Shown: positions 5,221 through 60,166, numbered from the stretch's first letter. The stretch: DNA of 64,000 nucleotides from Macrostomum lignano (GCA_002269645.1 NIVC01000576.1:235637-299636); one strand, 5' to 3'. Numbers and translations are program-made. The notes: generated by a model not told the origin, from the sequence alone.

Positions 5221-6630
5221 CTGACTGTGCTTTAGACTTGTACACAGCGTGGAAATGGGCATGAACTTGTTTCGCTGTTCATTCTTTGTTGCCTTATTTT
5301 GATTGTCTATGGCCCAAACATAGTTAAGAATAAGATATTCTATGGGTTTGAGGTCGGTATGTGGTTAAATCCCGAGAGCCGAGGTTGTCTATTCTTACCA
5401 TAGACAAAATTTCATTAAGAAATTTTCCGAGTCACGAAGGAAGAGAAGAGAGAAGCTCGCTTATTTAGAAAGCTCGTACATACAATAATCCTTGCAATAT
5501 GTCCGGGAAAGTGATCGATTAAATCCCGCAAAATATAAAATCTATGTCAATAACCTCCCTGAAAGTGAGCTTTAAAGTGGTTTAAATTAGAATTCACTAC
5601 TTGACTCTACTCTCCTCTTCTTTATACTCTCCTGGAGCTCTTCTCCCCGACCCAGTTTTCTTATTTTGTCTAAAGCCATTAATTTCCACATTCGACATAT
5701 CTTGGTTTGTTTCTCTCGGGAAAATTTGTTCGATAACATTCATCAGGCAACTAGCAAAAGCAGAAAATGAACAAAAACACGTCCCAAGGAATTAGCTCGC
5801 ATATAGTAAAAAATCGCGCCAACCATCAGATTAGGCTTGCAGAAACGAAGCGATTAACTTCAGGATAATCTTTTGAAGATTTTCACATTCGTTCCGGCCT
5901 CGCTTGCTTTCTCGGAAATTGTTTGCAAATCTTCCGGGCTGGGCTGGGACAGGGGGCGGTGCAGGAGTCACTAGGAGGGGAGGGGGGCGATTGACCTCAT
6001 CAGGGCCAGAGGGGGGCCTTTAAGCTTTCTAAGCTCTCTAGCAGCTGGGTTCGCAAGCAGTGGCCGCGACTGGGGCTTGACTTCACAGCTGGTGGCCTAA
6101 GCTAATGCTGCTGCTGCTGCTGCAGCCACCCTAAAGCTGCCTTCATAGCCAATGTTTGGAAAGAGAGGCGCAAAAGCAGATAGGAGCAGAGAGATTTAGT
6201 AGCGCGCTGCCTGCCTGGGCTTGGGAGATTTTGTTGGCAAACTATGCGGTTACGTAAGCGATGGACGAGAGGTGGAGACGCTGCAAGTGCATCGGGGGTG
6301 TTTGCGAAAATAAATCTCGGCTGCTGCTGCTGCTTGGGTTTACAGAAAGACTGAAATCCTCAATCTTATTCCAACCTTTTTGCCTCTTTTGCTGAAGTGG
6401 CCAATTGCGCCCCAACAGAGGCTTTGAGGTGCCTCCGTCACGTTTTATCATCGTGTGCTAAGTCAAGTTGCCTTGGGCTTTTAAGTCAGGTTTTGGTAAT
6501 TCAAAGTCAAGTTTTTGAGCTCGCTTGATGATCTAGTAATTAGTTGTCTCAGTCCCGTTTCAAGGTGTCTAAGTTCCGTTTTGATGTTTCTTCTACAAGT
6601 CCCGTTCTTGAACTGTCTAAGCATAGCCAA

Positions 6631-7187
6631 CGCGTTCAGGGTTGCCTAAGTCACGCGTTCAGGGTTGCCTAAGTCACGCGTTCAGGGTTGCCAAAGTCAC
6701 GCGTTCAGGGTTGCCAAAGTCACGTGTTCAGGGTTGCCTAAGTCACGCGTTCAGGGTTGCCTAAGTCACGTGTTCAGGGTTGCCAAAGTCACGCGTTCAG
6801 GGTTGCCAAAGTCACGCGTTCAGGGTTGCCTAAGTCACGCGTTCAGGGTTGCCAAAGTCACGTGTTCAGGGTTGCCTAAGTCACGTGTTCAGGGCTGCCT
6901 AAGTCACGTGTTCAGGATTGCCTAAGTCACGCGTTCAGGGCTGCCTAAGTCACGTGTTCAGGGTTGCCTAACTCACCTGTTCAGTGTTGCCATAGTCACG
7001 CGTTCAGGGTCGCCTAAGTCAAGCGTTCAGGTTTCCCCTAAGCCACGTGTTCAGGGCTGCCTAAGTCACGTGTTCAGGATTGCCTAAGTCACGCGTTCAG
7101 GGTTGCCTAAGTCACGTGTTCAGGGTTGCCAAAGTCACGTGTTCAGGATTGCCTAAGTCACGCGTTCAGGGCTGCCCAAGTCACGTG
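6631..7187. repeat. 23-bp minisatellite, about 24 copies
   Basis: Unit CGCGTTCAGGGTTGCCTAAGTCA with point variants. Confidence 0.95.
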
Positions 7188-9249
7188 TGGAAGATGTCTA
7201 AACAACGTGTTAAAAATGCCTACGCCACACCTAAAGTCACGTCTCGAATTAATAAAAGACTCCAGCACTGCCAGCAAAAATTCAAGTACCCCCTCGAAGC
7301 TGTTCTGCAAGCATAGAGAATGAGGAATCCCAGAAATCATCATTGCATGCCAACAAAACCGAATATCCAAGTCAATCTCCCCCATGCAGTCTTATTCTCT
7401 CAGGCGTCACAGCCGAGCGATCTTGCCAAGCCCCACTGCCGGATTTCAGGCCGCTGCAGGGTTGAAAGCCGTGCATTGGCTATAAGAGACGCACACATCA
7501 GGCTGACCTCCAGTGCGTGAATGTATGTATACACTCTAGATATATGGCATCATAGCCTTTGGTATAGCCTGCTTTGCATATACATAGCTTGCCTGAAGCT
7601 TCTTTTAGAAGCCTCTCCTATAGTCCTGGCATAAACATTCCGTCAGTATAGAAGGGAAAGCCAGAGAGGAGATCAAGCCCTGCATGGTCGGCTAAGCAAA
7701 AAAGGGAATCTATACCAGAACAGAATCGGAGAATGTCGGAAGGCGAGACGAAGAAGAGTGTATGTGTTTGTCTCCCAGCCTCTATGCTGGTGCAGCTTTT
7801 AGAAGCAGACTTCTTTCACTATCAAAGACTAATGGCTGCAGCTATAGCCTATTTGACTGTTGGTCGTGTTGGGATAAAAAATTTTCTCGTATAATTTTGT
7901 TTTTCCCCTCAGTTGCGCGCTGCACAATGCAATACACAATCATCCCGGATGCCAAATATCTTTGAACAGCTAAATATAGGCTAGAGATAATGCGATCAAG
8001 GATGTCGATTTCTGCTTGGGTTGATTCTGCCCGAAGCAACAAGAAAAGCCTCTCAACCTGATAGCATAGCAGCAGATAGGGAAATTTAATATTTTAAAGT
8101 ACACAAGTCAATATAAAGTTCAGGGAACCTTATTTAGCTTATACAGTTAAAAATAGGTTGAACTATTTCTATCAGCGAGACTGGGTTGCTAACAGCCTGC
8201 AGCATAGGCCAAATCTTCCGGGGGAAGTGCACCACACTGACCCATCGAAAATAAGCCCCCAACCCTCAACATCCTTATCTTCTTTGGAGGCTCGGCCGCC
8301 CTCTCTGTCTCTATTATCGAAAATCCAAGAATTCCATTCGAGGCCCAGCTGTTTTCAGTGTAAACCGTGTCGCAATCCAGAGAAGAGAGGCTTTCACTAC
8401 TGGCAAGTCCAATATGGTCTAGCGAAAAAAAGACTGCACCTTGTTGCTAATATCAGTCAGAAATAATCTTTCACCGGCTCCGCTTATCTCGTTCGTCGGG
8501 TACGTTAAGCCTGCGCCAACTCGAGGGGAAAATTCTCCACGCATCGAAATGCCCTTCCGAAATACGAACGATTAGGAAGAATTGGAGGAATTCATTGATT
8601 TTCGCATCGCCTATACTCGTAGTTGGGAAGATCTTGATGCTCGCTTCTCGCTCTCTTCCTTTCAGTTAAAGAAAAATAGTCAATTTCTTCTTTCTAAGGA
8701 AGAAAAGTGTTGCACCCAGAGCCATACTTAAAATCGCCACTGCACAGCTAGCTGAGAGAGCGCGCATTTCCTCACGCTCTGAGTTGAAGAAGAAGTTCCT
8801 GACCATTATTTCACAGAGAACACGGAGAGCAGACAGTAATTCTGCTGCACCCAAGGCTGAACTTGTTTTTTCTCTGCTTTTGCGTTGGAATTTCTTGAAA
8901 AGCGCCGAGAGGGTCCCGCGCAAGTGAAGCTCAAAGTGGGAAGACGGCTTGGAGTTTAAAGAGAATTTTCTATCGGTGCGCTCGAGTCACGGCGAATGCA
9001 CGGAGCTCCTTTTGCCATTCTATCCGCCGGCAAAAAGTTAAGGCAAATTTGCATCTTCTTCCACTCGATCAGCATACATCACTCCGAGCACACTGTCTAC
9101 GTCTGTGCTCAACTTGACCAAACAGACTTAGCGCTCAACTTCAAAGCTAAACAGATAAGATTCCGAATGTCTATTTGCTTAGTAGCCGGACAGGTCCTAA
9201 CAAGACTAAAAGGAGAGAATTCTTTTTAAAATTTTTAAGAACTAGCTCG

Positions 9250-9718
<469 letters not shown>

Positions 9719-10571
9719 ATGTTATCTCAGTTTCCAAGCGGATCTCTATCGCCCCAAAAGCCAGCTCTCCCGTGCCGTGACCTCATCCTCTCCTATGTCC
9801 CAGCCCCCAACACAATCCCCCACATCCGCAAACAGTTGGCAGCCAGCCATAGACCACAATTTTACAGCCGGCAAAGAGGCAATTTGTCACACTTCGATTC
9901 GAAATGCTTTCCCCTTTAAACAAAACGAACCTTCAAAAAACATTGCTTCACAGGCCCTCTCATTCTTCATCTCAACGGCTTGCATTTAGTAGCCAGAATT
10001 TCGGGACTTTAGCAGCCATGCAAACCAAACGCATGCATGACCCGAACTGAAGCTAACCTCAGACCAGAAAGGCAACAATAAACCATAGTTTATAGTTCAT
10101 AGCATTAATTCGTGTTAATCCAGAATTGGAATTTCCGATAAAAATTTAATATCAAACGCTCCGGTCGGTCCCATTATTTGCAGACATTTCAACCAGTACG
10201 GAGCAATAAAAACTTTGCGTTAGGAAATTATGGCTTTCTACTATATTGCTGTTGTTGCAGATTCTGCGCCATTTGCATAGCTGGACCCAGCGACACTCGC
10301 TACAAGCCAGGTTGCAGTGAAGGTGAAGCTGCAGGTGTTTTCACCACCACCGAGAGTTCAAAGTCGGTTTGAACTGCAAGGGAGACCATGCGGAATCACA
10401 GCAGTCTGTGCGTTCATCTGCTACGCAAATTATGGGAAATTCCTTGGAAACTTCGGTCTTGCGTTTGGCTGGGAAATACAAGGAATTTCCTGTTGAAATG
10501 TGTACTGCATGACCTTGCGGATTTCTTACCTGTCTCACGCATGTCATCTGTATTAGTGTGAGTCTGTCTTG

Positions 10572-12942: not shown

Positions 12943-13054
12943 CGACGGAGTCAGAGTCCTCCGTGACCGCGGTGGCTCGAGAGGCCGGCGCCTGCCTCTG
13001 ACGCTGACTCGGCGGCGGGGCCGTCCAGGCTGCCTCAGCTTTTTTGGGATCGCG
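12943..13054 (-). CDS. Uncharacterised gene X, exon 4 (RDPKKAEAAWTAPPP...TEDSDSV)
   Basis: AG acceptor after a pyrimidine tract; strong G|GTAAGT donor; phase 0 start matches the end of exon 3; GC-rich. The terminal exon is not resolved. Confidence 0.55.
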
Positions 13055-13191
13055 CTGTTTTGTCCGTGGGAGAAAAGCAAAGACATCGATTGTTTCTCTT
13101 GGCGTGGCTATACTATAATTTCATTGTGCTGGTCTAGAGGGTCAGAGCACAAGTGCGATTGCAAGACCATGAATTTGATGTAGATTTTAGC

Positions 13192-13710
13192 TCTAGAGGC
13201 CATGTAGAGAATCTATAGGTCATTAAAAGAATCTAGAGGCCAGATGGAGAATCTAGAGGCCAGATGGAGAATCTAAAGGTCATTTAGAGAATCTAGAGGT
13301 CATTTAGAGAATCTAGAGGTCAACAAGAGAATCTAGAGATCAACAAGAGAATCTAGAGATCAATAAGAAAATCTAGAGATCAATAAGAGAATCTAGAGAT
13401 CAATAAGAGAATCTAGAGATCAATAAGAGAATCTAGAGATCAATAAGAGAATCTAGAGGCCACTGAGAGAATCTAGAGACCATTTAGAGAATCTAGAGAC
13501 CATTCAGAGAATCTAGAGGCCATTTAGAGAATCTAGAGACCATTCAGAGAATCTAGAGACCATTTAGAGAATCTAGAGACCATTTAGAGAATCTAGAGAC
13601 CATTTAGAGAATCTAGAGGCCATTTAGAGAATCTAGAGACCATTTAGAGAATCTAGAGACCATTTAGAGAATCTAGAGACCATTTAGAGAATCTAGAGGC
13701 CATTTAGATA
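13192..13710. repeat. 20-bp minisatellite, about 25 copies
   Basis: Unit CATTTAGAGAATCTAGAGAC, with CAATAAGAGAATCTAGAGAT variant blocks; lies in intron 3 of gene X. Confidence 0.93.
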
Positions 13711-13840
13711 GTCTACGTGCATCTCTCATGTCAAATTAAAAATCCGGTGAGTCAGTTAGAGGTTCTGAGGGAGATTTAGAAATTCTGAAGGTCATGAGTA
13801 CATATAAAGATCAAAAGGCCACCTAAGTTCGTAGAGCAGG

Positions 13841-14049
13841 CAGGGGTCGGCTAACTTGTTTACCTCAAGGGCCAGTTAAAGAATCTGCTCATGGCTGTGG
13901 GTCCGATGAGAGAGGAGAGAAGAGGAAAGAAGAGATAATAATTAAAGGAGAGAAGAGAGCTGAGAAGAGATATACAAACCTAGCTTGAGTGGGCCAGATT
14001 GCTATTGTAAAGTTTCAAAGGACCCGAGGGCCGGAGTTGCTGACCCCTG
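13841..14049. mobile_element. hAT/Charlie-like MITE
   Basis: Ends CAGGGGTCGGC.. / ..GTTGCTGACCCCTG, with GGGCC subterminal motifs; no TSD recovered. Confidence 0.55.
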
Positions 14050-14134
14050 ATCTAAAGGATCTCGAGATTAATGTTCAAATAGAATTTCTGAACCATTCCG
14101 GTTACAATAACGCTCGTACATGAGAAGCCCTCAC

Positions 14135-14231
14135 CATATAGTTAACTTGTCGCCTGTACAGCTCTTTGTCCAAGCCAGCAGTCACCAGCTGACCGCACTC
14201 GGTCTGAAACTGGCTGACAGCTTGAGAAGCC
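14135..14231 (-). CDS. Uncharacterised gene X, exon 3 (ASQAVSQFQTECGQLVTAGLDKELYRRQVNYM)
   Basis: TTTTTTCAG acceptor and ATG|GTGAG donor; 97 nt; phase 2 start matches the end of exon 2. Confidence 0.7.
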
Positions 14232-14694
14232 CTGAAAAAATAATTATTTACATTTGCTTATTGTTGTTGTAAGCCAGACGGAACCAACTGAAGGTCATTT
14301 CCTAATTCCTACTGCTCTTAATTATTATATATTAGCGTAATTAACGTTATCAGACGCACATATCTGGCTTTTATCCAAGGCTTGATTGATGCAAACGCCC
14401 CGACAGTAATTTGATTGATTGACACACGAGTTATCAGCAAGTAACTACATGTAATCTCTCCGATGTCAAAATCGAATAATGAAATCAGTAGCGGTGTCTC
14501 TGAAATCAAATAAAGATTCTAAATTAATTTATCCACTGGCACTGCTCATAGCTAATAAATAAAATGTACTTCAACCAATTCAATTCTGTCTGAATTTGAT
14601 ATATCAATTATCTGCATGGAGCGATCAAGGACTTTTATATAGTTAGTGTCTGGACTGGATATCCAAGTCAACAATAATGGACATCTTGCTGAAG

Positions 14695-14955
14695 TGGTGT
14701 TGTAGCCCAGTGGTTAGAGCGGAGCGGCCGACTCACGACTTGAGGGTCGGGGGTTCGATTCTCGATCCCACTGGAACAATTTGTGTCCTTGAGCTGTAAA
14801 ATGGGTGCCAGCATTAGCTGGGGTAATTGAGGGTGTGTGGGACTGAACAGCCGTACGCAGCCTTCAAATGCGCGGAGCAATAGCTACGGCTGAGCTGTCA
14901 GTTGCACATCTGGCCCAGTTGGGGCAGGTGTAATCAATTATTATTATTATTATTA
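14695..14955 (+). mobile_element. tRNA-derived SINE, copy 1
   Basis: A box TAGCCCAGTGG, B box GGTTCGATTC, CTGTAAAATGGG body motif, (ATT)n tail; 9-bp TSD TTGCTGAAG at 14686-14694 and 14956-14964. Confidence 0.88.
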
Positions 14956-17569
14956 TTGCTGAAGAATATTCTATTCCCAATTTCTAGATCCAAAAGCCCC
15001 TGGCTCAGGAAGCGAATGCCCCACTTAAGACACTCAACCATCGAGTCGAGTAGTTTTAGCGCATAGCCGAGTGTACTCAGGCTAACAACCCAGTGTCCAT
15101 GATGTCAGCATTATGCCGTAATTATGCTGACGCGTCAGCATATTTTTGACAAGCAAAAAAATTCCAAATTTGTGTTGCATTGATATCTGTTTGATATTTA
15201 TTGAAAGTGCTTCCAGTTTTGCCAGCAATTCTTTCTTTTTTAGGCGCAGCATCAAACTGGAATAAATTTGGCCTGTGCATGCCACGGCACAATTAAGGCA
15301 TTAAGTGCTAAAAATATGACTTTGAGAAACTTAGAAGGAAAAGATTTTATGCAGGTTCCTGAATAGTCCCAAATTTATAATAGTCTTCAAAGATACCCAT
15401 TGACAAATTTTACTGTCTTCATAATTTTTGCATATATACAGCATGCAAATGCTTGTTCATTTCGTCGATTTGATATAATTTGAATTGTACATGTTTCTTA
15501 TATATACTGAATGGACTACAAATAGTAGTCATACAAGTAATATTTAGATGGTTTATTTTAAGCTATGTTATCTTTTGGCTATAGTAGTTATACATGTTTT
15601 TATTTTTTGTTATAATACTAAATATTGAACAATATTGAACAAAAATATAGCACATTTTTAATTGATGCTTTTTACACTCATTTGTCTTAGGCCTAGTCTG
15701 TCTCGATCAATTGTACTGGCTTTTATATGTATGCGCAGAAAAATACCTTTTCTAACAAGGCATTTGTATATTAGTTTCTAGCAATAGTAGTGGGTGCAGT
15801 CTGACAATTTTCTAAGGCTGTATATGATATTACGAAGTTATATATGTTAATGTACTAGCCTAGGCTCTATAGGCATAGGCCTATGTGAAATATTGTACTT
15901 GTCATATTTTATATAGGGCCTACACCAGTTTTTAGTTGCTTTGTTGTATAAATTGCTGTTAAAATATGATATGATATAATACTGTTCCTTGTAGTTTATA
16001 TTGCAAATAGCAAACAATTACATATTCAGTTGTCAAAAAAGGATAAAACTAATTTTAAGTTTTATCTAAATCAATGAAACAAATGTTGAAATCAGACAAT
16101 AGGCTTTTTCCAGTTTCTTAACTATTTTATTTACTGGGACACTTAAGCCTTTAAGAGGTCTACTTATAGTAAAGTACTTATCTAAATATCTATAGACAGA
16201 ATAATAATTCATTGTAGGCCTAATTATAGGTTATAAACATAGCTAGGCCTATAGTATATTATTGTATAAGGCAAAAAAAGGTTTAACCTTTTATATTTAT
16301 AAGTTAGGCCTAATGAATAGGCCCTTAATTTACTCTGTATATATATAAAGCCTAGGTTTTTTTAAGGTTAGAAATCCAGTTGCCAATGGCTATTTTTGGT
16401 TGCCCACTGGCAACCTAACTACCCACATTCTTGAGGATCTAGATATTTCTAGGGCTCATTAAAACATGGATACACTATATGACTATGTGAATGAAACAGT
16501 TTGGGACTTGGTATTAAATTGACATTGAAATTATCCATTTTTGCAACTTTGTTTTTGCATCAACTTAGATTAATAGGCCTATAACATTTTTATTATACTT
16601 GTAAAATCATTTTCTGAAAGTGGCAACTGGCACAGCCCACAGGGAAATAAAGTTGCTAGATTGGCCTCTGATGCCAAAAATCCAATTGCCAATGAGATTT
16701 TCAAGGGGCCAAAAAATCCCATATGGCCAAAAAATAAACCTAGGCATTATATCTTATATTCTTGTTATTTAATTACTAATTTAACTATAAAGTGCCAATT
16801 TATTTTGATTTAATAGGATTTATTTGGTTACCTACAAAAAATAAATATAATATAATAATATATAAAAGCAAATTCTATAAACAAAAAATTTAAATTGAAT
16901 ATCAATTTTTTAGCAATATTAAAAATGTGATAAATATATTTTTTCCATCATAGTTTAAGACTTTATTATGGCTTTTTAAATTCTAATTTTTTATTTTTTA
17001 TATTGTAATGTTCATGATATTTTCATGATTAAATGTCTAAATACGATATATTGATACAATATTAAGTATAGCAAAAGCAGTTAATATGCAGTGTATTATG
17101 TTAATGTGTAGTTTAATATTTTTATATATTGCAAGTATAGCATGTTGTTAAAGAGGGACATTATTTTCATGGTATATATTGACAAAGATCAATCAATTTT
17201 ATTAGTTTACTATGTGGATAAGACTAGGACTAGGAGCAGCATTATCTACATAATTCTATGCCAATTGGGAAAATATTCTATAGTATATAATATTAAATAT
17301 TAAGTATTGAGTAGTATTAAGTATTTTCTTCCTTAATAGTCAGTTTATCTAAGATTCTAAGAGAAGGAAAGACAGGGATTGGAAAAGAATAATAGATATA
17401 TATTAGACAACTATATAAGTGGTAGAAAGGAGAGGAGAAGACTATGGGAATTGAAAAAAGAAAAGTTTGTAAGTGGGAGTTAAAAGCCAAATAAACATGT
17501 TATCTAAAGTCCAATTCATGCATTATTTCTTATTTCAGATGAGCATTCAATTTGAACAATGCAAATTCA

Positions 17570-18025
17570 AAGTCACATGCTTCGAAGCTGGGATGCAATT
17601 ACTGTCAAGGTTGAAGAAGTTTCGCTGAAGATAGGGTGGTTTACAAAACTTTTGTAGGCATTAAAAGAACAGATGCAGACTACAAATCTGGTCTTGAGAA
17701 TAACCAACTGCAGATTTCGCCACTCATTGACAATGCAAACTTGCAGTCTGGTTTCCCTGTTGATTACTAACATTCTGTTTGTTTGGGAGTTGTTCGCCAA
17801 TTGTTAAAGTTTTTTCTCCACTGTAAAGGGTTTTTGTCTTCGTTGTAAATTACACCCAACTGCTTTGGCTGAGCTGTCTGAAAAGTCGATTTCTTTGGCA
17901 AAATTTATACCAAATGAGTTTCAGTGACGGCCAAGGCGATTTGATACCAAGCTTTCTCATTTTAAGGCAACAGAATTCAGACTCTTTGCTGTATTTGGGA
18001 CCCTATCTTTTAAAGAAGTATCTGC
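17570..18025 (+). pseudogene. EnSpm/CMC-type transposase relic
   Basis: SHASKLGCNYC; RTDADY...SPL...FPVDY*HSVCLGVVRQLL; IPNEFQ*RPR...KATEFRLF/LLYLGPYLLK. These are the typical animal CMC motifs, interrupted by stops and frameshifts. Confidence 0.85.
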
Positions 18026-18329
18026 TTATAACTTTTGTATGTTGTTTTTGTTGCTATATTCTGTTTATATTTTTATGTTGTTATGTTTCTGTTTTCCCAT
18101 GCTATTTAAGTTACTATTTAAGTTAAATTATAAAAGAATTAAAGAACTAAAAACATGTTCCTACCATTGTTTTCGATGTTAAAAAAATACTTTTCTGCGC
18201 CGTCTTTTTTACAATACACTCGTATTTAGTTCTTTTGTACCATTTCCTAAAGCCTAATTAAAGCCTTGTGGAGTTCAAAAAGGGTTAAGTGCTTCATTGT
18301 AATAATTGGACAACAATTGCATTATTTAT

Positions 18330-18685
18330 GAGCCACAGAAAGCTACGGCGTACATTGGTTTACTATATAATTGAACAGGCATATCAGTCGCATATAGTTG
18401 GCATAAAAGCAGCATTACACTGGCATTTCATGCTAACATAATGCCTGGATCCCGTCGCGACATTCAGTCTGGCATGATATGCCAGCATTATTCCAACAAT
18501 GCAGCCACAATGCTACGAAGTACATTGGTTAACTACGTAATTGAACAGGCATATCAGTCGCATATAGTTGGCATAAAAGCAGCATTACACTGGCACTTCA
18601 TGCTAACATTATGCCTGGATCTCGTCGCGACATTCAGTCTGGCATGATGCTGGCATAATATTCCGGCATTATTCCGACAATGCGG
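18330..18685. repeat. 170-bp tandem duplication (2 copies) in the CMC right subterminal region
   Basis: TACATTGGTT at 18351 and 18521, followed by near-identical sequence. Confidence 0.9.
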
Positions 18686-19133
18686 ACACTGGGAAGCAGG
18701 GCAACAGTTCCAAATTAAATTTGTACTTTTTTTCGTTGAATTAGTTTCTCATATTTTATACTCGGCTAATATTTGCTCTGGCTGGAATCTCAGCTACCTC
18801 TCTTCTCTTTTCTATATGCAGGTAGAACCACCAATACAAAAACACACAATTTCCAGCTAAAATAAATTAATTTGCGGATTACACTACTAATTAGTTTATT
18901 TAAGTAGGATGTTTGACGCATTAACTTGAAATTCTAAGTAAATTATAAAATCAGTTATGGTGTTAATTAATTGTTAAGATTGTTATCTACTGAACCGGTT
19001 AATTTCTATTAGGAAAATAATTAAAATTGAAAGCAAAAACACGCGCGCAAAAGAATTATTGAGGTTATATCGAATGTTAATTTATGCTACAGGTGTTGCG
19101 TTTCTGACAATAAAAGCATGACAATATATTTAC

Positions 19134-19237
19134 TCAGGCGGTAGGGTTTCAATACAAGCCTGCAGCTTGGCATCAAGCCAAGCTCTGCAGTCTGTGTCCA
19201 GGGTGCGCCTGTCCTCCCAGGCTATGTTTGGAGGCGT
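19134..19237 (-). CDS. Uncharacterised gene X, exon 2 (TPPNIAWEDRRTLDTDCRAWLDAKLQACIETLPP)
   Basis: TTTGCAG acceptor and GA|GTAAAT donor; 104 nt, phase 0 to phase 2. Confidence 0.7.
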
Positions 19238-19470
19238 CTGCAAAGTGACGGCGTAACAGAATGAGCGGAGAGTGAGATTGCATGTCAGCGTACTGATTAG
19301 GACTATTAAATCAGTATTGCATAGTGTTCTAATAAATGAATAAGTTAACTTTGCAAACAAGTTTAATTAACATCTATAGTGCTAGTTCTAAAACGATAAA
19401 CACTATAAACATCCGTGAGAATAATGTTGAAAGTTAGATTAACAATCGAGGGAGTTTATTTCCCCATCTT

Positions 19471-19690
19471 ATAAACACCCATGACAGTTTATTATCCGAC
19501 TTTATAAACACCCATGAAAGTTTATCATCCGACCTTAAAACACCCATGAAAGTTTATCATCCGACCTTATAAACACCCATGAAAGTTTATTATCCGACCT
19601 TATAAACACCCATGAAAGTTTATCATCCGACCTTATAAACACCCATGAAAATTTATTATCCGACCTTAAAACACCCATGAGATTTCACTA
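19471..19690. repeat. 33-bp minisatellite, about 6.5 copies
   Basis: Unit ATAAACACCCATGAAAGTTTATTATCCGACCTT; lies in intron 1 of gene X. Confidence 0.9.
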
Positions 19691-19923
19691 CCCGACAAGC
19701 ACCTAAGCAAGTTTCAACCCTGATTTAATAAACATCCGTGGAAGTTTACTTGCTAGAATACGCAATTGCTAGAAAACAAACAGATTCAATGTAGACATGT
19801 CAAAGCTGTACAAGCAAACTATGTACAAGGTTAAAGAGAGGCAAAGTGCTTCTAGAAGTTGATTCAAGCTCAACAATTGATCAAACAGTTTTATCTCAGA
19901 CCAGCAGTTGAGCAGTGACTCAC

Positions 19924-20160
19924 TATTACGCCCGGGTCAATGCTGTCGTGTGGAAAATAATTTCTAACAAACACTTCGCCTAACAATTGAAACGTCATCT
20001 GTTTGAACCGATCCGATTGGCTGAACGCTGGCTCAGCTTCGATGCTATTGGCTAGCCGCTCAGCCAATAGGTGAGAGGCGCGCTGCCATTGGCTGGTTGG
20101 CTGCAGGCTGTCCTGATAGGCGTTGTTCAACCAACGCTGGGCGAACGGCTTCTCAGACAT
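19924..20160 (-). CDS. Uncharacterised gene X, exon 1 (MSEKPFAQRW...HDSIDPGVI, 79 aa)
   Basis: First in-frame ATG at 20160, with an in-frame stop upstream; ATA|GTGAGT donor; GC-rich coding-like composition; phases chain through exons 2-4 (183 aa). Confidence 0.7.
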
Positions 20161-20218
20161 GCTCGCCGGGTGTTGCAATGTTGCAGCTGTGTGTGAGTGT
20201 TTTGTTAGCGATTAGCGA

Positions 20219-20282
20219 TTAACGATTGGCTAATCTCAGAGTTGGCGGCTGCAGACCAAAGCAGTGCTTGTTCACCGGGTCT
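20219..20282 (-). CDS. SPRING1: SPRING1/C12orf49 homologue, exon 4 (R-DPVNKHCFGLQPPTLRLANR*)
   Basis: CCCGCAG acceptor, phase 2; matches the YRDP..KYCYG..PP C-terminus of the family. Confidence 0.88.
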
Positions 20283-20574
20283 CTGCGGGTTGAGACAGGG
20301 AAACGATTGAAATTTGTCTATCTAACATCAGCTCAGCAGCTTTAATGCACGAGATTTAATATGCAACATTTTCTGTTGAATTGAGATCCTAGATACGCCA
20401 GATCGCAGACCCTCCGATCCACTGACAGCTTTTCATACCCAGAAAACAGATCCCCAAATTATTGATTAATTATAGATTCTCAATTCTAGATTTAATATTC
20501 GCTTTAAAAATATTGGAGCTCTATAAACCTAAATCCTCAAATCCTTGAATTTCGGATTCTAAAACGCCAAATCC

Positions 20575-21890
20575 TCAGATATCAGATCTCCGATCTTCAG
20601 ATCCCAGATTCTTTGATTTTTTAGATCCCAGATACTCAGATCCTCAGATCCAGATCCTTAGACCCTCAGATCCTCAAATCTAGATCCTCAGATCCTCAAA
20701 TCTAGATCCTCAGATCCTCAGATCCCAGATTCTCAGATCCTCAGATCCCAGATTCTCAGATCCTCAGATCCCAGATTCTCATATCCAGATCCTCATATCC
20801 AGATCCTCAGATCCCAGATTCAGATCCTTAGACCCTCAGATCCTCAAATCTAGATCCTCAGATCCCAGATTCTCAGATCCTCAGATCCCAGATTCTCAGA
20901 TGCTCAGATCCCAGATTCTCATATCCAGATCCTCATATCCAGATCCTCAGATCCCAGATTCTCATATCCAGATCTTCAGATCCCAGATCCTGATCCTCAG
21001 ATCCCCAGATCCTGATCCTCAGATCCCAGATTCTCAGATCCTGATCCTCAGATCCCAGATTCTCAGATCCTCAGATCCCAGATCTTCAGATCCCAGATCT
21101 TCAGATCCCAGATCTTTAGATCCCAGATCTTCAGATCCCAGATCTTCAGATCCCAGATCTTCAGATCCCAGATCTTCAGATCCCAGATCTTCAGATCCCA
21201 GATCTTCAGATCCCAGATCTTCAGATCCCAGATCTTCAGATCCCAGATCCTCAGATCACAGATCTTCAGATCCCAGATCTTCAGATCCCAGATCCTCAGA
21301 TCCCAGATATTCAGATCCCAGATCTTCAGATCCCAGATCTTCAGATCCTCAGATCCCAGATATTCAGATCCCAGATCCTCATATCCTCAGATCCCAGATC
21401 TTCAGATCCCAGATCTTCAGATCCCAGATCCTCAGATCCCAGATCTTCAGATCCCAGATCTTCAGATCCCAGATCTTCAGATCCTCAGATCCCAGATATT
21501 CAGATCCCAGATCCTCATATCCTCAGATCCCAGATCTTCAGATCCCAGATCTTCAGATCCCAGATCCTCAGATCCAGATCCTCAGATCCCAGATCCTCAG
21601 ATCCAGATCCTCAGATCCAGATTCTCAGATCCTAAGATCCAGATCCTCAGATCCCAGATCCTCAGATCCAGATCCTCAGATCCCAGATCCTCAGATCCAG
21701 ATCCTCAGATCCCAGATCCTCAGATCCAGATCCTCAGATCCAGATCCTCAGATCCAGATTCTCAGATCCTCAGATCCAGATCCTCAGATCCCAGATCCTC
21801 AGATCCAGATCCTCAGATCCAGATTCTCAGATCCTAAGATCCCAGGTCCTCAGATCTCATATCCTCAGATCCCAGATCCTCAGATCCCAG
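20575..21890. repeat. AGATCC-based low-complexity satellite filling SPRING1 intron 3
   Basis: Mixtures of CAGATCC, CAGATCTT and CAGATCCT subunits forming 15-bp-type repeats. Confidence 0.93.
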
Positions 21891-21928
21891 AGCCGAAAGT
21901 GTACTCTGCAGTATATAATCAAGCCAAC

Positions 21929-22279
21929 CTATAAGCGTTCTCGTGCTGCACGCTCTCAGAGCTGGTCCGGCAGCGGGCCAGGCACAACTGAAACGGATCG
22001 GCCACCCGCAGTAAAACTTTGTCACCGAGTGCTCGCGCTCTGAGCAGCACCGCCTCTAGGATCGGTCGCTGATTCGGCTGCAGACAGCACGAGACGCAGG
22101 ACTCGAAGCTTTTGCAGCACAGACTAAACTGATTACAAGCGGAGCAGTGGTACCTCACGGACCGCTGGCTGGGGTAGGGGCAGCAGCCGCCGGTCAGGAG
22201 ATCCGCGCGAGAACAGACCACGCCTCGCTCGTCGACTAGGGAGTCTCGGCCGCCGACTGAATTGCGGCACGTGTATTGC
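21929..22279 (-). CDS. SPRING1: SPRING1/C12orf49 homologue, exon 3 (Cys-rich domain)
   Basis: [24 protein letters not shown]...GCC...[13 protein letters not shown]...[22 protein letters not shown]; CTCCGCAG acceptor and AG|GTTGG donor. Confidence 0.95.
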
Positions 22280-22309
22280 CTGCGGAGCAGCGAGCGATCG
22301 GCTGAGGAT

Positions 22310-22412
22310 GTCTGTCTGTGTGTCTGTCTGTCTGTGTATGTGTCTGTCTGTGTCTGTCTGTCTGTCTGTGTCTGTCTGTCTGTCTGTCTGTCTGTGTCTG
22401 TCTGTCTGTCTG

Positions 22413-22443
<31 letters not shown>

Positions 22444-22446
22444 ATG

Positions 22447-22507
<61 letters not shown>

Positions 22508-22774
22508 ATGTGTCTGTCTGTCTGTCTGTGTATGTGTCTGTCTGTCTGTCTTTCTGTGTATGTCTGTCTGTCTGTCTGTCTGTCTCTCTGTGTATGTCTG
22601 TCTGTCTGTCTGTCTGTCTCTCTGTGTATGTCTGTCTGTCTGTCTGTCTGTCTCTCTGTGTATGTGTCTGTCTGTCTATCTGTGTATGTGTCTGTCTGTC
22701 TGTCTGTCTCTCTGTGTATGTGTCTGTCTGTCTGTCTTTCTGTGTATGTGTCTGTCTGTCTGTCTCTCTGTGTA

Positions 22775-22811
<37 letters not shown>

Positions 22812-23184
22812 GTGTATGTCTGTCTGTCTGTCTTTCTGTGTATGTCTGTCTGTCTGTCTGTCTCTCTGTGTATGTGTCTGTCTGTCTCTCTGTGTATGTG
22901 TCTGTCTGTCTGTCTGTCTGTCTTTCTGTGTATGTCTGTCTGTCTGTCTGTCTGTCTATCTGTGTATCTGTCTGTCTGTCTTTCTTTCTGTGTATGTCTG
23001 TCTGTCTGTCTCTCTGTGTATGTGTCTGTCTGTTTCTCTGTGTATGTGTCTGTCTGTCTCTCTGTGTATGTGTCTGTCTGTCTCTCTGTGTATGTGTCTG
23101 TCTGTCTATCTGTGTATGTGTCTGTCTGTCTGTCTCTCTGTGTATGTGTCTGTCTGTCTGTCTCTCTGTGTATGTGTCTGTCTG

Positions 23185-23215
<31 letters not shown>

Positions 23216-23566
23216 ATGTGTCTGTCTGTCTGTCTGTCTGTGTATGTGTCTGTCTGTCTGTCTGTCTGTCTCTCTGTGTATGTGTCTGTCTGTCTGTCTG
23301 TCTGTGTATGTGTCTGTCTGTGTCTGTCTGTCTGACTGTCTGTCTGTCTGTATGTGTCTGTCTGTCTGTCTATATGTGTATGTGTCTGTCTGTCTGTCTT
23401 TCTGTGTATGTCTGTCTGTCTGTCTGTCTCTCTGTGTATGTGTCTGTCTGTCTCTCTGTGTATGTGTCTGTCTGTCTATCTGTGTATGTGTCTGTCTGTC
23501 TGTGTCTGTCTGTCTGTCTCTCTGTGTATGTGTCTGTCTGTGTCTGTCTGACTGTCTGTCTGTATG

Positions 23567-23597
<31 letters not shown>

Positions 23598-24015
23598 GTA
23601 TGTGTCTGTCTGTCTGTCTTTCTGTGTATGTCTGTCTGTCTGTCTGTGCATGTGTCTGTCTGTGTATGTCTGTCTGTCTGTCTGTCTGTCTTTCTGTGTA
23701 TGTCTGTCTGTCTGTCTGTCTGTCTATCTGTGTATGTGTCTGTCTGTCTGTCTTTCTGTGTATGTCTGTCTGTGTATGTGTCTGTCTGTCTTTCTGTGTA
23801 TGTTTGTCTGTCTATCTGTGTATGTGTCTGTCTGTCTTTCTGTGTATGTCTGTCTGTCTGTCTGTCTATCTCTTTGTGCGTCTCTGCCTCCTGTGTCTGT
23901 TCCTGTGCCTGTATATCTGTCTGTCTGTCTGTCTATCTCTCTGTGCGTCTCTGCCTCCTGTGTCTGTTCCTGTGCCTGTATATCTGTCTGTCTGTACCAG
24001 TGTGTCTGTCTGTCC
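22310..24015. repeat. Compound (TCTG)n/(TGTA) microsatellite filling SPRING1 intron 2
   Basis: About 1.7 kb of TCTG interspersed with TGTGTATG; the source of the 357-579 aa SVCL ORFs. Confidence 0.97.
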
Positions 24016-24257
24016 GCCCTTCTGTGTGGAAATCTCTGACTGCCTGAAGGTAGCCTCCAACAGTGCAGTGTCCGGCTGCCCGTCTCTGTGTCTGCCTTGC
24101 CGTGGTTTTCAGCGTTCGTCTGTACTGTACCAATTTGACTGCCTGTCCGCCCATAAAGTTCAGTGTGTCTGGCAGTGTGTCTGTCTGACAGACACATATC
24201 TGGCTGCATTATTTCATAGTTAGTGCCAACTCTACGGAAGATTTAAACAAAACCAAC

Positions 24258-24430
24258 CTGAGCCTCAGCTGCGGTGAAGAGAAGTTTTTGCTGGCAGCAG
24301 CGGAGGAATCTGCAGCACTGGAAGTGTTGCCGGTCCCAGAGCCCACCTGATCGAGATCGAGCGGATGCCGCGACTGCCACTTGAAGGCGAGCAGTTGTTC
24401 GGTGCTGTCTTGCGAGCCGCTGCTAAAACT
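24258..24430 (-). CDS. SPRING1: SPRING1/C12orf49 homologue, exon 2 (stem region)
   Basis: SFSSGSQDSTEQLLAFKW...SPQLRL; 173 nt, phase 0 to phase 2; AG|GTTGG donor joins exon 3 in frame. Confidence 0.75.
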
Positions 24431-25095
24431 CTGTTATAAATGAGTAAAAAGGCGAAGTGACGAGCCTGCAATCCACCGACTAAGTCGATCAAATTTATCC
24501 TAATTTCTATTGTAAAAAAAACTTATAAATGTTTTTGGTATTCTTTCCAAACTCTATACAAAAACAATTAAACAAAAAAATGTTTGATTTTTAAATCAAA
24601 CATAAATCTCAAATTTAACCTTGAGATTGTGTAATTTCTTGGAAAGAAAAACAGTGGAGGAAAGAGGACAAAACTTTTTATCATATACATACAATCAATG
24701 CCTATGCCACATTCAAATCTGTTATACAGAATGCTAGACAAAGTGACCCCCTATATCATAAATTCAAGTTTATGTCAGAAAAACAAATTTACTTGTGATA
24801 TTAACGGCTGGATATTATCAGAAAGATGTTGCAACAATAAAGGACCTCTAGCATATATGTAAGATTCTGGAGTGGGGTACCCATGCCTGCAGCCCAGATG
24901 ATACAACCAGTCCTCAACAAGTTTGGACCCAGACCCAAGTAGGCATGAAGGGATTGTTACTTTTAACTTTTACTATTCTCTTTTAAATTTTTAAGGCAAA
25001 AGCTTGTCACCCTTTTGTTTACTTATATCTCATTACTTTTAACATTTTTTATTTGTAACTATTTTATTCATTTATAAAGAATGGCTAGGCCCTAG

Positions 25096-25978
25096 TATTG
25101 GTTTTGTTAGCCTAACTGAGAATAAAGCCATGCTCCAATAGTTTAAGCCATTTTTGCAGGTTTAGGAGTAACTCCTCACTCGGACCACTTTCAGTAGTAA
25201 TCCAAGCACTCTCCAATTTTTCTGCGCACTCCCAAAGACTTGCTAGCTGCGGGGATGGTCTGGGTGGATTCAGTCCTAGTACCATATCTGATTCCACTAA
25301 TATTGGGTTGGCGGTGTCTTGTACCATAGGCTTGGGTCAACTTCGCCCACCCTTTGAGCCGGGTTCAATTCCCATGTCTCTCGGGGTATCTCGGGCTCTG
25401 AACAGCCCCTGGTAGTGCCCTTCGCAGCAGAGCCCTTCCCTAGGCTGATTCGCGGGTCCCCCTAGGACTCTTCGTTTAACAACAACAACAAAGCCATCCA
25501 AAGTGAGAATCCTGCCTACGCTGACTATGAAGGGCCTGGCTGCGTGCAGCCTTAGTCTATGGGCCATAGACTATAAAGGACAAGCAAAGTGATAAAAAGC
25601 CATTCAATGTGAGAATCCTGCCTATACTGAATACGAAGGGCCTAGCTGCGTCCAGCCTAGTCTATGAGCCATATGAGTCTAGGATTTTAACTCTTTACTT
25701 TACTGTCCTGTATCATCCAGTGTGTTCCTGTTTCTGTTATTCTGTTCAAGCTATTGGCTAGTCATATGGCTCAGAAGGTATAAAAATAAAAGAATTCGAC
25801 ACATAAACCAATTGATTCTCACATTGGATGGCTTTTTATCACTTTGCTTGTCCTTTATTGTCTATGGCCCATAGACTAAGGCTGCATGCAGCCAGGCCCT
25901 TTGCAGTCAGCGTAGGCAGGATTCTCATTTTGGATGGCTTTATTCTCTTTATTCTCAATTAGGCTGACAAAACCAATA
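25096..25978. mobile_element. Foldback/MITE-like inverted-repeat element in SPRING1 intron 1
   Basis: Left arm 25096-25131 plus 25498-25617; right arm 25814-25978 in inverse orientation; the arms are built from a unit of about 107 bp; no TSD seen. Confidence 0.65.
25132..25489 (+). mobile_element. Non-LTR retroposon-type insertion (SINE or truncated LINE end)
   Basis: (AAC)n tail; 8-bp TSD AAAGCCAT at 25124-25131 and 25490-25497; B-box-like GGTTCAATTCC at 25362; interrupts the left foldback arm. Confidence 0.7.
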
Positions 25979-26396
25979 ATGATTTATAAGGTAAGGTAGA
26001 AGCTTGTTTCCTATTTGTTATTTGACCTCTTATTTTGTTTTTTTATTTGTTTTACTTTTAATACTTTGTTTAAATATAATCACAATCTCTGTGTGAAATG
26101 ATACAATCATTTGCTGTCAAAACATTACATTGTGATTAGCAAAAATGTCGCATAGCCAACCAAAACAACAAGACCTTGCACCCAAACCAAAGTATGGTCT
26201 ATAAATTAATTTTATATCTATCTAACCTGTTTAAGTTACTATAACTAGTCATTATCATAAAAAAATTAAAATAGGCCTAGGCACTGAAAGCATTTTAAAA
26301 CTTGTCAAAAGCAAAATAGTAAAAGTACATCATTTGCATTTTAGCACAATTTAAAATTTAGCACAAATTTAGTCAAGGCGTAGGTACACCACTTGC

Positions 26397-26507
26397 CTCT
26401 GGGTTGCGATAGAAGACAAAAATCAATCCAAAAAGAAGCAAAATTGGAAAGATAATATAAATGCGCCGTAATCTGTTTAAAATCCAACGCAGCACACGCA
26501 GTTGCAT
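26397..26507 (-). CDS. SPRING1: SPRING1/C12orf49 homologue, exon 1 (type II signal anchor)
   Basis: MQLRVLRWILNRLRRIYIIFPILLLFGLIFVFYRNPE: a basic N-tail plus hydrophobic anchor; GAG|GCAAGT GC-type donor in phase 0. Full model is about 232 aa. Confidence 0.8.
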
Positions 26508-60068: not shown

Positions 60069-60166
60069 CGTGACGCCTTGACTTTGAGCCGGGGCTTTCT
60101 CATGACGCATTTATCTTCGTCATAACTAAGTGTAAAAACTAACCGCTCAAAAAAACAGGTAAAAGC

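What the first reader, a model, noticed from the sequence alone, without database searches (positions are those of the whole stretch)
12943..26507. Operon-like pair: an unknown gene starts 58 bp after the SPRING1 stop codon
Seen: the SPRING1 TAA ends at 20219 and the next same-strand ATG is at 20160. The 58-bp gap has no AATAAA and no room for a promoter, but holds an AG acceptor (CACACACAG|CTGC) 26 nt before the ATG. The two ORFs are in different frames, and this acceptor does not fuse them in frame. This compactness is striking because both genes have multi-kb repeat-filled introns. Established: spliced-leader trans-splicing resolves polycistronic pre-mRNAs in flatworms, nematodes and tunicates. 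Inference: a dicistronic unit that links the SREBP/site-1-protease cofactor SPRING1 to an uncharacterised partner.
Basis: partly seen in the sequence, partly recalled or inferred. Interest (0 to 1): 0.8.

Follow-up and report, generated by a model that had tools for sequence, protein, structure and literature searches.

The report
Flatworm SPRING1 operon-like pair, anciently linked
In the flatworm Macrostomum lignano, a real and conserved gene starts 58 bases after the SPRING1 stop codon; this is most likely an ordinary spliced-leader operon, but the same two genes also sit next to each other from corals to amphioxus.

Summary
The window is Macrostomum lignano scaffold NIVC01000576.1. SPRING1 (minus strand, 4 coding exons) ends with TAA at 20221-20219. 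The next ATG is at 20160, 58 nt later. The gap has no AATAAA and has an AG at 20188-20187.

"Gene X" is real. Exons 1-3 encode the N-terminal helical domain of a conserved, uncharacterised metazoan protein of about 1,200-1,650 aa, some members with RabGAP-TBC hits. Exon 1 scores E=8e-18 against the family profile, and hits stop exactly at the predicted donor. The rest of that protein is not in the window.

M. lignano has about 30% SL trans-spliced genes and about 15% of genes in operons, with an intergenic mode near 100 bp. The best reading is therefore a dicistronic, SL-resolved unit: one more member of a known kind. This is unproven, because no RNA data could be reached.

- A 37-nt GT..AG interval (20223-20187) does fuse the two ORFs in frame. 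UniProt holds such chimeras.
- 12943 is an exon end, not the gene end.

New finding: SPRING1 followed by gene X on the same strand, 0.3-3 kb apart, in a coral, annelid, mussel, two echinoderms and amphioxus.

The parts
26397..26507 (-). SPRING1 coding exon 1 (ATG at 26507). It is followed by a GC-AG intron with donor GAG|GCAAGT.
   Evidence: The spliced translation equals PAA80530.1 (P0017) exactly.
24258..24430 (-). SPRING1 coding exon 2
21929..22279 (-). SPRING1 coding exon 3 (cysteine-rich core, PF10218)
20219..20282 (-). SPRING1 coding exon 4, ending in TAA at 20221-20219
20161..20218 (-). 58-nt stop-to-start spacer: TCGCTAATCGCTAACAAAACACTCACACACAGCTGCAACATTGCAACACCCGGCGAGC. It has no AATAAA or ATTAAA.
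20205..20221 (-). TAATCGCTAATCGCTAA, which places TAA stops in all three frames. It includes CTAAT and CTAAC (20208-20204), branch-point-like motifs 17-24 nt upstream of the AG.
   Evidence: Read directly from the sequence. Branch-point function is inferred.
20187..20188 (-). Candidate SL trans-splice acceptor AG (CACACACAG|CTGC). The exon would start at 20186, 26 nt before the ATG.
   Evidence: The sequence does not match the enriched [T/C]TNCAG motif of PMC8629364. Use of this site is not shown.
20249..20255 (-). Alternative candidate acceptor TCTGCAG| inside SPRING1 exon 4. It matches [T/C]TNCAG.
   Evidence: Sequence and motif from PMC8629364. Use of this site is not shown.
20187..20223 (-). 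37-nt GT..AG interval (GTTAAT...CACAG). Its removal fuses SPRING1 and gene X in frame. UniProt chimeras A0A1I8H574 and A0A1I8JF41 use it.
   Evidence: The donor GTTAAT departs from the M. lignano consensus GT[G/A]AG.
19924..20160 (-). Gene X exon 1 (79 codons, donor ATA|GTGAGT)
   Evidence: Family HMM E=8e-18. 22 homologues hit by tblastn, and many of the hits end exactly at 19924. phmmer finds 25 hits, the best at 6e-12.
19134..19237 (-). Gene X exon 2 (acceptor ctttgcag|, donor TGA|GTAAAT, phase 2)
   Evidence: The HMM hit is collinear (profile positions 81-114, E=0.08). phmmer alignments run across the exon 1/2 junction. The same junction is used in P0002 and P0019.
14135..14231 (-). Gene X exon 3 (acceptor ttattttttcag|, donor ATG|GTGAGG)
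   Evidence: Weak collinear HMM hit (profile positions 131-160), with AGLDKELY against the family's TGLDRELY. It lies inside the confidently folded helical model.
12943..13054 (-). Gene X exon 4 (low-complexity linker, donor G|GTAAGT, phase 1). The ORF is still open here, so the gene is not finished.
   Evidence: The A6 run in the window is A7 in loci L001 and L003, which gives RDPKKS* there.
20016..20231 (.). Cluster of five AGCCAAT/ATTGGCT (CCAAT-box-like) 7-mers. Four lie within 79 bp inside gene X exon 1, in different reading frames.
   Evidence: The window has 15 copies in total. Simulated 64-kb sequences never exceeded 3 copies in any 220 bp. The function is unexplained.
19468..19680 (-). 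33-bp tandem repeat in gene X intron 1. It carries the first minus-strand AATAAA copies after the SPRING1 stop (19657, 19591, 19493), so it may hold the SPRING1 poly(A) signal.
   Evidence: Use as a poly(A) signal is inferred.
15089..18693 (.). 3.6-kb AT-rich insertion in gene X intron 2. It is present in this copy only.
   Evidence: It is absent from the allelic or duplicate loci L001 and L003.

Best explanation
SPRING1 and the gene 58 nt downstream form a two-gene transcription unit in Macrostomum lignano.

Proposed mechanism (all steps inferred):
- RNA polymerase II starts at the SPRING1 promoter and reads through both genes.
- The downstream mRNA is released and capped by trans-splicing of the 35-nt spliced leader. 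The acceptor is either the AG at 20188-20187 (CTAAC branch-like motif 17 nt upstream) or TCTGCAG| at 20249.
- SPRING1 mRNA is cleaved and polyadenylated either directly at that site, as in operons with no intercistronic spacer, or further downstream. In the second case its 3'UTR overlaps gene X exon 1.

The downstream gene is the flatworm orthologue of a conserved but uncharacterised metazoan protein. At least the N-terminal helical domain is present. Full-length relatives are 1,200-1,650 aa, and some carry weak RabGAP-TBC and C2 signatures.

Shown here: organism identity, both gene models, the 58-nt spacing, homology of gene X, and conserved adjacency in other phyla.
For: - Organism: the window is 100% identical to M. 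lignano NIVC01000576.1 over 26,289 nt.
- Gene X is genuine. phmmer against 1.8 billion representatives gives 25 hits, the best at 6e-12, all at the N-termini of long metazoan proteins. The family HMM hits exon 1 at E=8e-18, and exons 2 and 3 match collinearly. tblastn hits end at the predicted donor. The AlphaFold model of exons 1-4 is confident and helical, with mean pLDDT 82.8 and above 90 over residues 31-120.
- The start codon is fixed. The conserved PFxxxWLN motif begins 4 residues after the ATG at 20160, and no ATG lies upstream in frame.
- A 58-nt gap cannot hold both a 3'UTR with a poly(A) signal and an independent promoter with a 5'UTR.
- UniProt models A0A1I8H574 and A0A1I8JF41 join SPRING1 to gene X exons 1-4 across multi-kb introns. 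That suggests a transcript spanning both genes. Such chimeras are usually mis-annotated operons in flatworms (PMC12582326).
Against: - No RNA evidence was reachable: no SL reads, no spanning reads, no poly(A) sites.
- The NCBI annotation of Mlig_3_7 was built with SL-read and poly(A) mapping. It lists no gene within 10 kb downstream of SPRING1 in any of three copies.
- The gap acceptor ACACAG does not fit the enriched [T/C]TNCAG motif.
- There is no canonical poly(A) signal between the stop and the acceptor; only 32 nt are available.
- The SL ends in AUG. Joined at 20186, it would open a 20-codon out-of-frame uORF overlapping the gene X start (sequence).
- The same tight adjacency exists in animals not known to trans-splice, so closeness alone does not prove an operon.
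- Only about 180 codons of gene X are in the window. The rest of the roughly 1,400-aa family protein is not found in the 12.9 kb downstream. Exon 4 carries a frame-breaking A6/A7 difference between copies.
Confidence: 0.55

Rival explanations
1. The two genes are overlapping but independent transcription units. Gene X has its own promoter inside SPRING1 (intron 3 or exon 4). The SPRING1 3'UTR runs through gene X exon 1 to a poly(A) signal in gene X intron 1. This is the arrangement the same gene pair must have in non-trans-splicing animals, only more compact.
For: - SPRING1->geneX is adjacent with 315-780-bp gaps in Owenia, Porites, Acanthaster and Branchiostoma, where no SL operons are known.
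- In those gaps, an AATAAA lies only 19-240 nt before the gene X ATG. The gene X promoter must therefore overlap the SPRING1 3' end there too.
- The first AATAAA after the M. lignano stop is 562 nt downstream, similar to the stop-to-AATAAA distance in Acanthaster (564) and Branchiostoma (543).
- A significant cluster of CCAAT-box-like motifs sits at this junction.
Against: - The CCAAT cluster lies mostly downstream of the gene X start codon, so it cannot be the core promoter of the full-length mRNA.
- SPRING1 intron 3 is almost entirely microsatellite.
- M. lignano resolves thousands of such tight pairs by SL trans-splicing.
- An internal promoter and SL trans-splicing are not mutually exclusive.
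Confidence: 0.2
2. Gene X at this locus is a truncated remnant, either a recent pseudogene or a short N-terminal-only form. It has little or no independent expression, and its first exon is simply part of the SPRING1 3'UTR.
For: - No CDS is annotated there in three NCBI-annotated copies.
- Family profile positions above 160 (the RabGAP-TBC-like and C2 regions) are missing from the window.
- Exon 4 differs by one A between copies, giving a premature stop in L001 and L003.
Against: - Exons 1-3 keep an intact ORF, canonical splice sites and the family's conserved residues in all three copies. This is despite more than 500 My of divergence from the other phyla (estimated from general knowledge). 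A dead gene would have decayed.
- The only substitution in exon 1 between copies is synonymous, but that is a single site.
- The product folds confidently.
- The missing part may lie beyond the window edge. The A6/A7 difference could be a homopolymer assembly error.
Confidence: 0.15
3. A single gene makes a SPRING1-geneX fusion protein. It does so by removing the 37-nt interval 20223-20187, which contains the stop codon, as in UniProt A0A1I8H574 and A0A1I8JF41.
For: - The interval is GT..AG, carries CTAAC 17 nt before the AG, and restores the frame exactly.
- Two independent public models use it.
- A mussel model (CAG2205966.1) is also a SPRING1+geneX chimera.
- From memory: very short introns (about 30-40 nt) are common in some flatworms.
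Against: - The donor GTTAAT departs from the M. lignano consensus GT[G/A]AG at positions +3 and +5.
- The same chimeric models also mis-splice SPRING1 exon 3: P0002 lacks 37 conserved residues.
- In starfish, crinoid, amphioxus, annelid and coral, the two are annotated as separate genes with separate stop and start codons.
- NCBI's transcript-based SPRING1 protein ends at the TAA.
- From memory: SPRING1 is a lumenal or type-II membrane protein, so a C-terminal cytosolic RabGAP-like fusion is topologically awkward.
Confidence: 0.05

Closest known systems
Macrostomum lignano SL-resolved operons (Wudarski et al. 2017, PMC5730564; Ustyantsev & Berezikov 2021, PMC8629364)
   Same: Same species. Two same-strand genes with a sub-100-bp spacer. 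An AG acceptor lies just upstream of the second start codon. Two-gene units are the commonest size.
   Different: SL addition and co-transcription are not shown for this pair. The acceptor lacks the enriched [T/C]TNCAG motif. The stop-to-acceptor distance (32 nt) is shorter than a normal 3'UTR plus spacer.
Operons without an intercistronic spacer: C. elegans SL1-type operons and Ciona operons (as summarised in PMC12582326)
   Same: The poly(A) site of the upstream gene would have to abut or overlap the trans-splice acceptor of the downstream gene, because only 32 nt with no AAUAAA are available.
   Different: This type has not been demonstrated in flatworms. In S. mansoni all 45 analysed pairs had at least 5 bp of spacer, with a median of 99 bp.
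Chimeric gene models of flatworm operons (Calvelo et al., PMC12582326)
   Same: UniProt A0A1I8H574 and A0A1I8JF41 fuse two unrelated conserved proteins that are separate genes in other species. This is the diagnostic those authors used for mis-annotated operons.
   Different: Their diagnostic also requires an SL acceptor site between the two halves, and that could not be checked here.
Ancient conserved microsyntenic gene pairs in Metazoa (a general concept, e.g. Irimia et al. 2012; cited from memory and not checked here)
   Same: The same neighbour pair, in the same orientation, is kept in Cnidaria, Annelida, Mollusca, Platyhelminthes, Echinodermata and Cephalochordata.
   Different: Most described blocks are explained by regulatory elements of one gene lying inside a bystander gene. 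Here the two genes are in tandem, with only 0.06-3 kb between the coding sequences. No report of this pair turned up; the one search run was for 'C12orf49' plus 'microsynteny'.

Membership tests
SL trans-splicing operon (flatworm type) | The organism carries out SL trans-splicing and has operons. | tested here: met
   The window is 100% identical to M. lignano Mlig_3_7 scaffold NIVC01000576.1. SL trans-splicing and operons in this species are documented in PMC8629364 and PMC5730564.
SL trans-splicing operon (flatworm type) | At least two genes lie on the same strand, separated by a short distance (<=1 kb repeat-adjusted in PMC8629364; <=300 bp in PMC12582326). | tested here: met
   There are 58 nt between the stop and start codons, and both genes are on the minus strand.
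SL trans-splicing operon (flatworm type) | The downstream mRNA carries the spliced leader at an acceptor upstream of its start codon. | not testable with these tools
   Candidate acceptors exist at 20187 and 20249. No RNA-seq or SL-read data were reachable.
SL trans-splicing operon (flatworm type) | One promoter drives a polycistronic pre-mRNA that spans both genes. | tested here: inconclusive
   The evidence is only indirect. Public chimeric models join the two genes. The NCBI annotation shows no second gene.
SL trans-splicing operon (flatworm type) | The upstream gene has a 3'-end formation signal before the acceptor. | tested here: not met
   None of 13 hexamer variants, including AATAAA and ATTAAA, occurs in 20218-20161. 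The nearest are GATAAA at 19895 and AATAAA at 19657.
SPRING1 / SREBP-regulating gene protein (Pfam PF10218) | Sequence membership in PF10218 with the conserved cysteine-rich core. | tested here: met
   The spliced CDS equals PAA80530.1. Homologues from insects, platypus, starfish and tapeworm all carry PF10218.
Uncharacterised metazoan RabGAP-TBC/C2-like protein family (e.g. Biomphalaria LOC106068297, Acanthaster LOC110981999) | The N-terminal helical domain (PFxxxWLxS...LLPxxPW...LLG..FV). | tested here: met
   Family HMM E=8e-18 on exon 1, with exons 2-3 collinear. phmmer best hit 6e-12. Confident helical model.
Uncharacterised metazoan RabGAP-TBC/C2-like protein family | The central TBC-like region (PF00566 in some members) and the C-terminal C2-like region. 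| tested here: not met
   No hit to profile positions above 160 anywhere in the window on either strand. These regions may lie beyond the window or may have been lost.
Uncharacterised metazoan RabGAP-TBC/C2-like protein family | Genomic position immediately downstream of SPRING1 on the same strand. | tested here: met
   This holds in Macrostomum (58 nt), Owenia (315), Porites (756), Acanthaster (766), Branchiostoma (780), Anneissia (2998) and Mytilus (chimeric model, under about 0.5 kb). It does not hold in the shark Heptranchias.
SPRING1-geneX fusion protein (UniProt A0A1I8H574 type) | A spliceable intron removes the SPRING1 stop codon. | tested here: inconclusive
   A 37-nt GT..AG interval restores the frame, but its donor GTTAAT is off-consensus. 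No junction reads were available.

The most novel reading that the evidence does not exclude
SPRING1 and the uncharacterised RabGAP-TBC/C2-like gene are an ancient, obligately linked tandem unit. The unit predates the cnidarian-bilaterian split and is kept together because the downstream gene is transcribed from, or regulated through, the 3' end of SPRING1. This would imply a functional link between the SREBP/site-1-protease cofactor and a membrane-traffic regulator. On this reading, the Macrostomum operon is the compacted, trans-splicing version of that ancestral unit. Operons would then arise preferentially from gene pairs that were already co-regulated and tightly linked.
Probability: 0.3. 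Interest if true: 0.65.

Novelty: new member of a known kind. Interest (0 to 1): 0.42.

Why it matters
As an operon candidate, this pair is one of roughly five thousand in M. lignano, so it is ordinary. What adds value is what the second look uncovered.

1. The "unknown gene" belongs to a conserved but unnamed and unstudied animal protein family. The family was found from coral to reptiles; no mammal or bird was among the hits listed.
2. That gene has sat directly behind SPRING1, on the same strand and usually less than 1 kb away, in every invertebrate phylum checked. This gives a concrete, testable hypothesis for its function: Golgi/ER traffic connected with SPRING1, S1P and SREBP.
3. It is a natural test case for how a tightly linked ancestral pair becomes an SL-resolved operon.

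The work also flags two UniProt SPRING1 entries for M. lignano, and one for Mytilus edulis, as chimeric models.

Tried and rejected
- The word-indexed protein search with gene X returned nothing. This was a false negative, because P0002 and P0019 contain the identical 114 residues. That null result is disregarded.
- Rfam at gathering thresholds found nothing in the window. The 35-nt SL sequence is not in the window with up to 3 mismatches, so there is no SL RNA gene here.
- dN/dS between copies was not usable. L001 and L003 are about 99% identical to the window, with only one (synonymous) difference in exon 1.
- I searched for the remainder of gene X with tblastn, a family HMM at E<=1000 and motif regexes on both strands. 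Nothing was found beyond exon 4.
- I searched for the RNFT-like RING gene that flanks SPRING1 in other phyla. It is not in the window.
- An Arf-GAP zinc-finger pattern was sought because UniProt names the exon 3-4 fragment A0A1I8H4N0 an "Arf-GAP domain-containing protein". None was found, and the name remains unexplained.
- Paper text and supplements were searched for Mlig001994 and Mlig028967. Nothing was found.
- The Xenopus orthologues were not on record for locus look-up.
- The family profile gave no hit against PDB sequences.
- The gene names Mlig001994.g1 and .g3 are both SPRING1. This could mean g2 and g4 are second genes in each transcriptional unit, but that is too weak to use as evidence.

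Full report
**1. What is in the sequence**

Both genes lie on the minus strand. The SPRING1 stop TAA is at 20221-20219. The next ATG is at 20160-20158, and the spacer 20218-20161 is 58 nt.

The spacer reads TCGCTAATCGCTAACAAAACACTCACACACAG|CTGCAACATTGCAACACCCGGCGAGC. Three points about it:
- It contains none of 13 poly(A) hexamer variants.
- Its (TAATCGC) repeat places TAA in all three frames.
- It has CTAAT and CTAAC branch-like motifs 17-24 nt before the AG at 20188-20187.

The two ORFs are in different frames. A GT at 20223 paired with that AG defines a 37-nt interval, and its removal deletes the stop codon and joins the ORFs in frame.

**2. Organism and SPRING1**

The four-exon SPRING1 model is 26507-26397, 24430-24258, 22279-21929 and 20282-20219. 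Intron 1 is a GC-AG intron. The model translates exactly to Macrostomum lignano PAA80530.1, which carries PF10218.

Locus L002 (NIVC01000576.1, assembly Mlig_3_7) is 100% identical to the window over 26,289 nt. Two further copies, L001 and L003, are about 99% identical.

**3. Gene X is real**

My own exon model matched public models that I had not seen when I built it. The exons are E1 20160-19924, E2 19237-19134, E3 14231-14135 and E4 13054-12943. All have good splice sites and consistent phases. UniProt chimeras P0002 and P0019 use exactly these junctions.

Homology evidence:
- An exhaustive phmmer search of 1.8 billion representatives gave 25 hits at E<1e-3, the best at 6e-12. Most alignments covered nearly the whole 114-residue query, and so the E1/E2 junction. 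All hits lay at the N-termini of proteins of up to 1,658 aa.
- A family HMM hits E1 at E=8e-18. E2 and E3 match weakly but collinearly.
- tblastn hits from 22 homologues stop at or within a few codons of the donor at 19924.
- An AlphaFold model of E1-E4 is a confident helical domain, with mean pLDDT 82.8.

The family is annotated only as "uncharacterized protein LOC...". It occurs in a coral, a brachiopod, molluscs, nemerteans, an annelid, rotifers, echinoderms, a hemichordate, amphioxus, sharks, amphibians, turtles and an alligator. Several members carry PF00566 (RabGAP-TBC), and one carries a C2-type hit. The family profile has no relative in the PDB by sequence.

Only the first 183 or so codons of gene X are in the window. 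Nothing matches profile positions above 160 on either strand. Exon 4 differs between copies: the window has a run of six A, while L001 and L003 have seven, which gives RDPKKS*. So the flatworm gene either continues beyond the window edge or is a short form.

**4. The pair is ancient**

SPRING1 is immediately followed by the gene X orthologue, on the same strand, in each of these species:

| Species | Group | Gap between coding sequences |
|---|---|---|
| Owenia fusiformis | annelid | 315 bp |
| Porites lutea | coral | 756 bp |
| Acanthaster planci | starfish | 766 bp |
| Branchiostoma lanceolatum | amphioxus | 780 bp |
| Anneissia japonica | crinoid | 2,998 bp |
| Mytilus edulis | mussel | under about 0.5 kb; the annotation fuses the two genes |

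- A divergent RING-finger gene lies upstream of SPRING1 in the mussel, amphioxus and crinoid.
- In the shark Heptranchias, that RING gene sits next to gene X with no SPRING1 exons between them. From memory, this fits differential loss after vertebrate genome duplication; it was not tested.
- In the non-flatworm gaps, an AATAAA lies 19-240 nt before the gene X ATG. Even there, the downstream promoter must overlap the SPRING1 3' end.
- One search, for 'C12orf49' plus 'microsynteny', found no paper mentioning this pair.

**5. How it most likely works in Macrostomum**

M. lignano trans-splices about 30% of its genes to a single 35-nt leader. About 15% of its genes lie in operons. The spacing between trans-spliced neighbours peaks near 100 bp, and most operons have two genes (PMC8629364; PMC5730564).

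A 58-nt stop-to-start gap cannot hold both a 3'UTR with a poly(A) signal and a separate promoter with a 5'UTR. Chimeric models of two unrelated conserved proteins are a recognised symptom of flatworm operons (PMC12582326).

I therefore favour a dicistronic precursor resolved by SL addition. The acceptor would be at 20187|20186, or at TCTGCAG| (20249), which fits the published acceptor motif.

Only 32 nt with no poly(A) signal separate the stop from the first acceptor. So the SPRING1 3' end must form in one of two ways:
- directly at the acceptor, as in operons without a spacer, or
- downstream, at GATAAA 19895 or AATAAA 19657, overlapping gene X exon 1.

All of this is inference, and I put it at about 0.55.

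**6. What weighs against it, and the rivals**

- No RNA data were reachable.
- NCBI's transcript-based annotation shows no gene within 10 kb downstream of SPRING1 in three copies.
- The gap acceptor lacks the enriched motif.
- The SL's terminal AUG would create an out-of-frame uORF over the gene X start.
- Tight adjacency exists without trans-splicing in other phyla.

The rivals are:
- overlapping independent units with an internal promoter (0.2);
- a truncated or silent remnant lying in the SPRING1 3'UTR (0.15);
- a true fusion protein through the 37-nt interval (0.05), whose donor GTTAAT is off-consensus.

**7. Unexplained extra**

Five AGCCAAT/ATTGGCT motifs cluster at 20016-20231. Four of them lie within 79 bp inside gene X exon 1, and they fall in different reading frames. 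In 200 simulated 64-kb sequences, the largest cluster in any 220 bp was 3.

The cluster looks like a CCAAT-box (NF-Y-type) array, or a repeated RNA motif. It lies mostly downstream of the gene X start codon, so it is not the obvious gene X promoter.

**8. Verdict**

- As an operon, the pair is an ordinary new member of a well-described class.
- The added interest is the deep conservation of the SPRING1->geneX tandem, and the functional hypothesis this gives for an unstudied protein family.

Noticed in passing
window 20016-20231: There is a cluster of five AGCCAAT/ATTGGCT (CCAAT-box-like) 7-mers, four within 79 bp inside gene X exon 1 and in different codon phases. This is far denser than chance: the window has 15 in total, and simulations never exceeded 3 in any 220 bp. 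It could be an internal or antisense promoter, or a repeated RNA motif.
   Followed up: partly
window 13031-13036 (exon 4); L001 about 22373; L003 about 20350: A homopolymer run differs between copies. The window has A6, which keeps the gene X ORF open. The other two genomic copies have A7, which gives RDPKKS* after exon 3. This is either a real truncating polymorphism or an assembly error.
   Followed up: partly
window 15089-18693: A 3.6-kb, roughly 30% GC insertion sits in gene X intron 2. It is absent from the two other copies of the locus and is probably a transposable-element insertion.
   Followed up: partly
window 26391-26396: SPRING1 intron 1 uses a GC donor (GAG|GCAAGT). The exact match of the spliced product to PAA80530.1 confirms this.
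   Followed up: yes
window 52320-54425 (-) and 60143-62341 (+): Two long ORFs (702 and 733 codons) lie in inverted orientation. The minus-strand ORF was searched against PDB sequences and is class C GPCR-like, with best matches to metabotropic glutamate receptors 4 and 6 at E about 1e-51. The plus-strand ORF was not searched. The two copies share about 94-97% identical DNA with each other and with part of L001.
   Followed up: partly
UniProt A0A1I8H574 (P0002), A0A1I8JF41 (P0019), A0A1I8H4N0 (P0018); Mytilus CAG2205966.1 (P0026): Public protein models fuse SPRING1 with the downstream gene in M. lignano and in Mytilus edulis. P0002 also lacks 37 conserved SPRING1 residues. The 74-aa exon 3-4 fragment is named "Arf-GAP domain-containing protein" although no Arf-GAP motif is present.
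   Followed up: partly
L007 (Owenia) 9686-10000; L009 (Porites) 9245-10000: In the annelid and the coral, an AATAAA lies only about 19-30 nt before the start codon of the gene X orthologue. The SPRING1 3' end and the gene X start would therefore almost touch in non-trans-splicing animals too.
   Followed up: no
L010 (shark Heptranchias perlo) 1-10126: An RNFT-like RING gene lies head-to-head 5 kb from the gene X orthologue, with no SPRING1 exons in the locus. This suggests that paralogous blocks lost different genes after vertebrate genome duplication.
   Followed up: partly
The word-indexed protein search returned no hit for a query that is 100% contained in two database proteins. Null results from that tool should not be read as absence.
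   Followed up: yes
window 19468-19680: A 33-bp tandem repeat (6.5 copies) in gene X intron 1 carries AATAAA in several units. These are the first canonical poly(A) hexamers after the SPRING1 stop codon.
   Followed up: no
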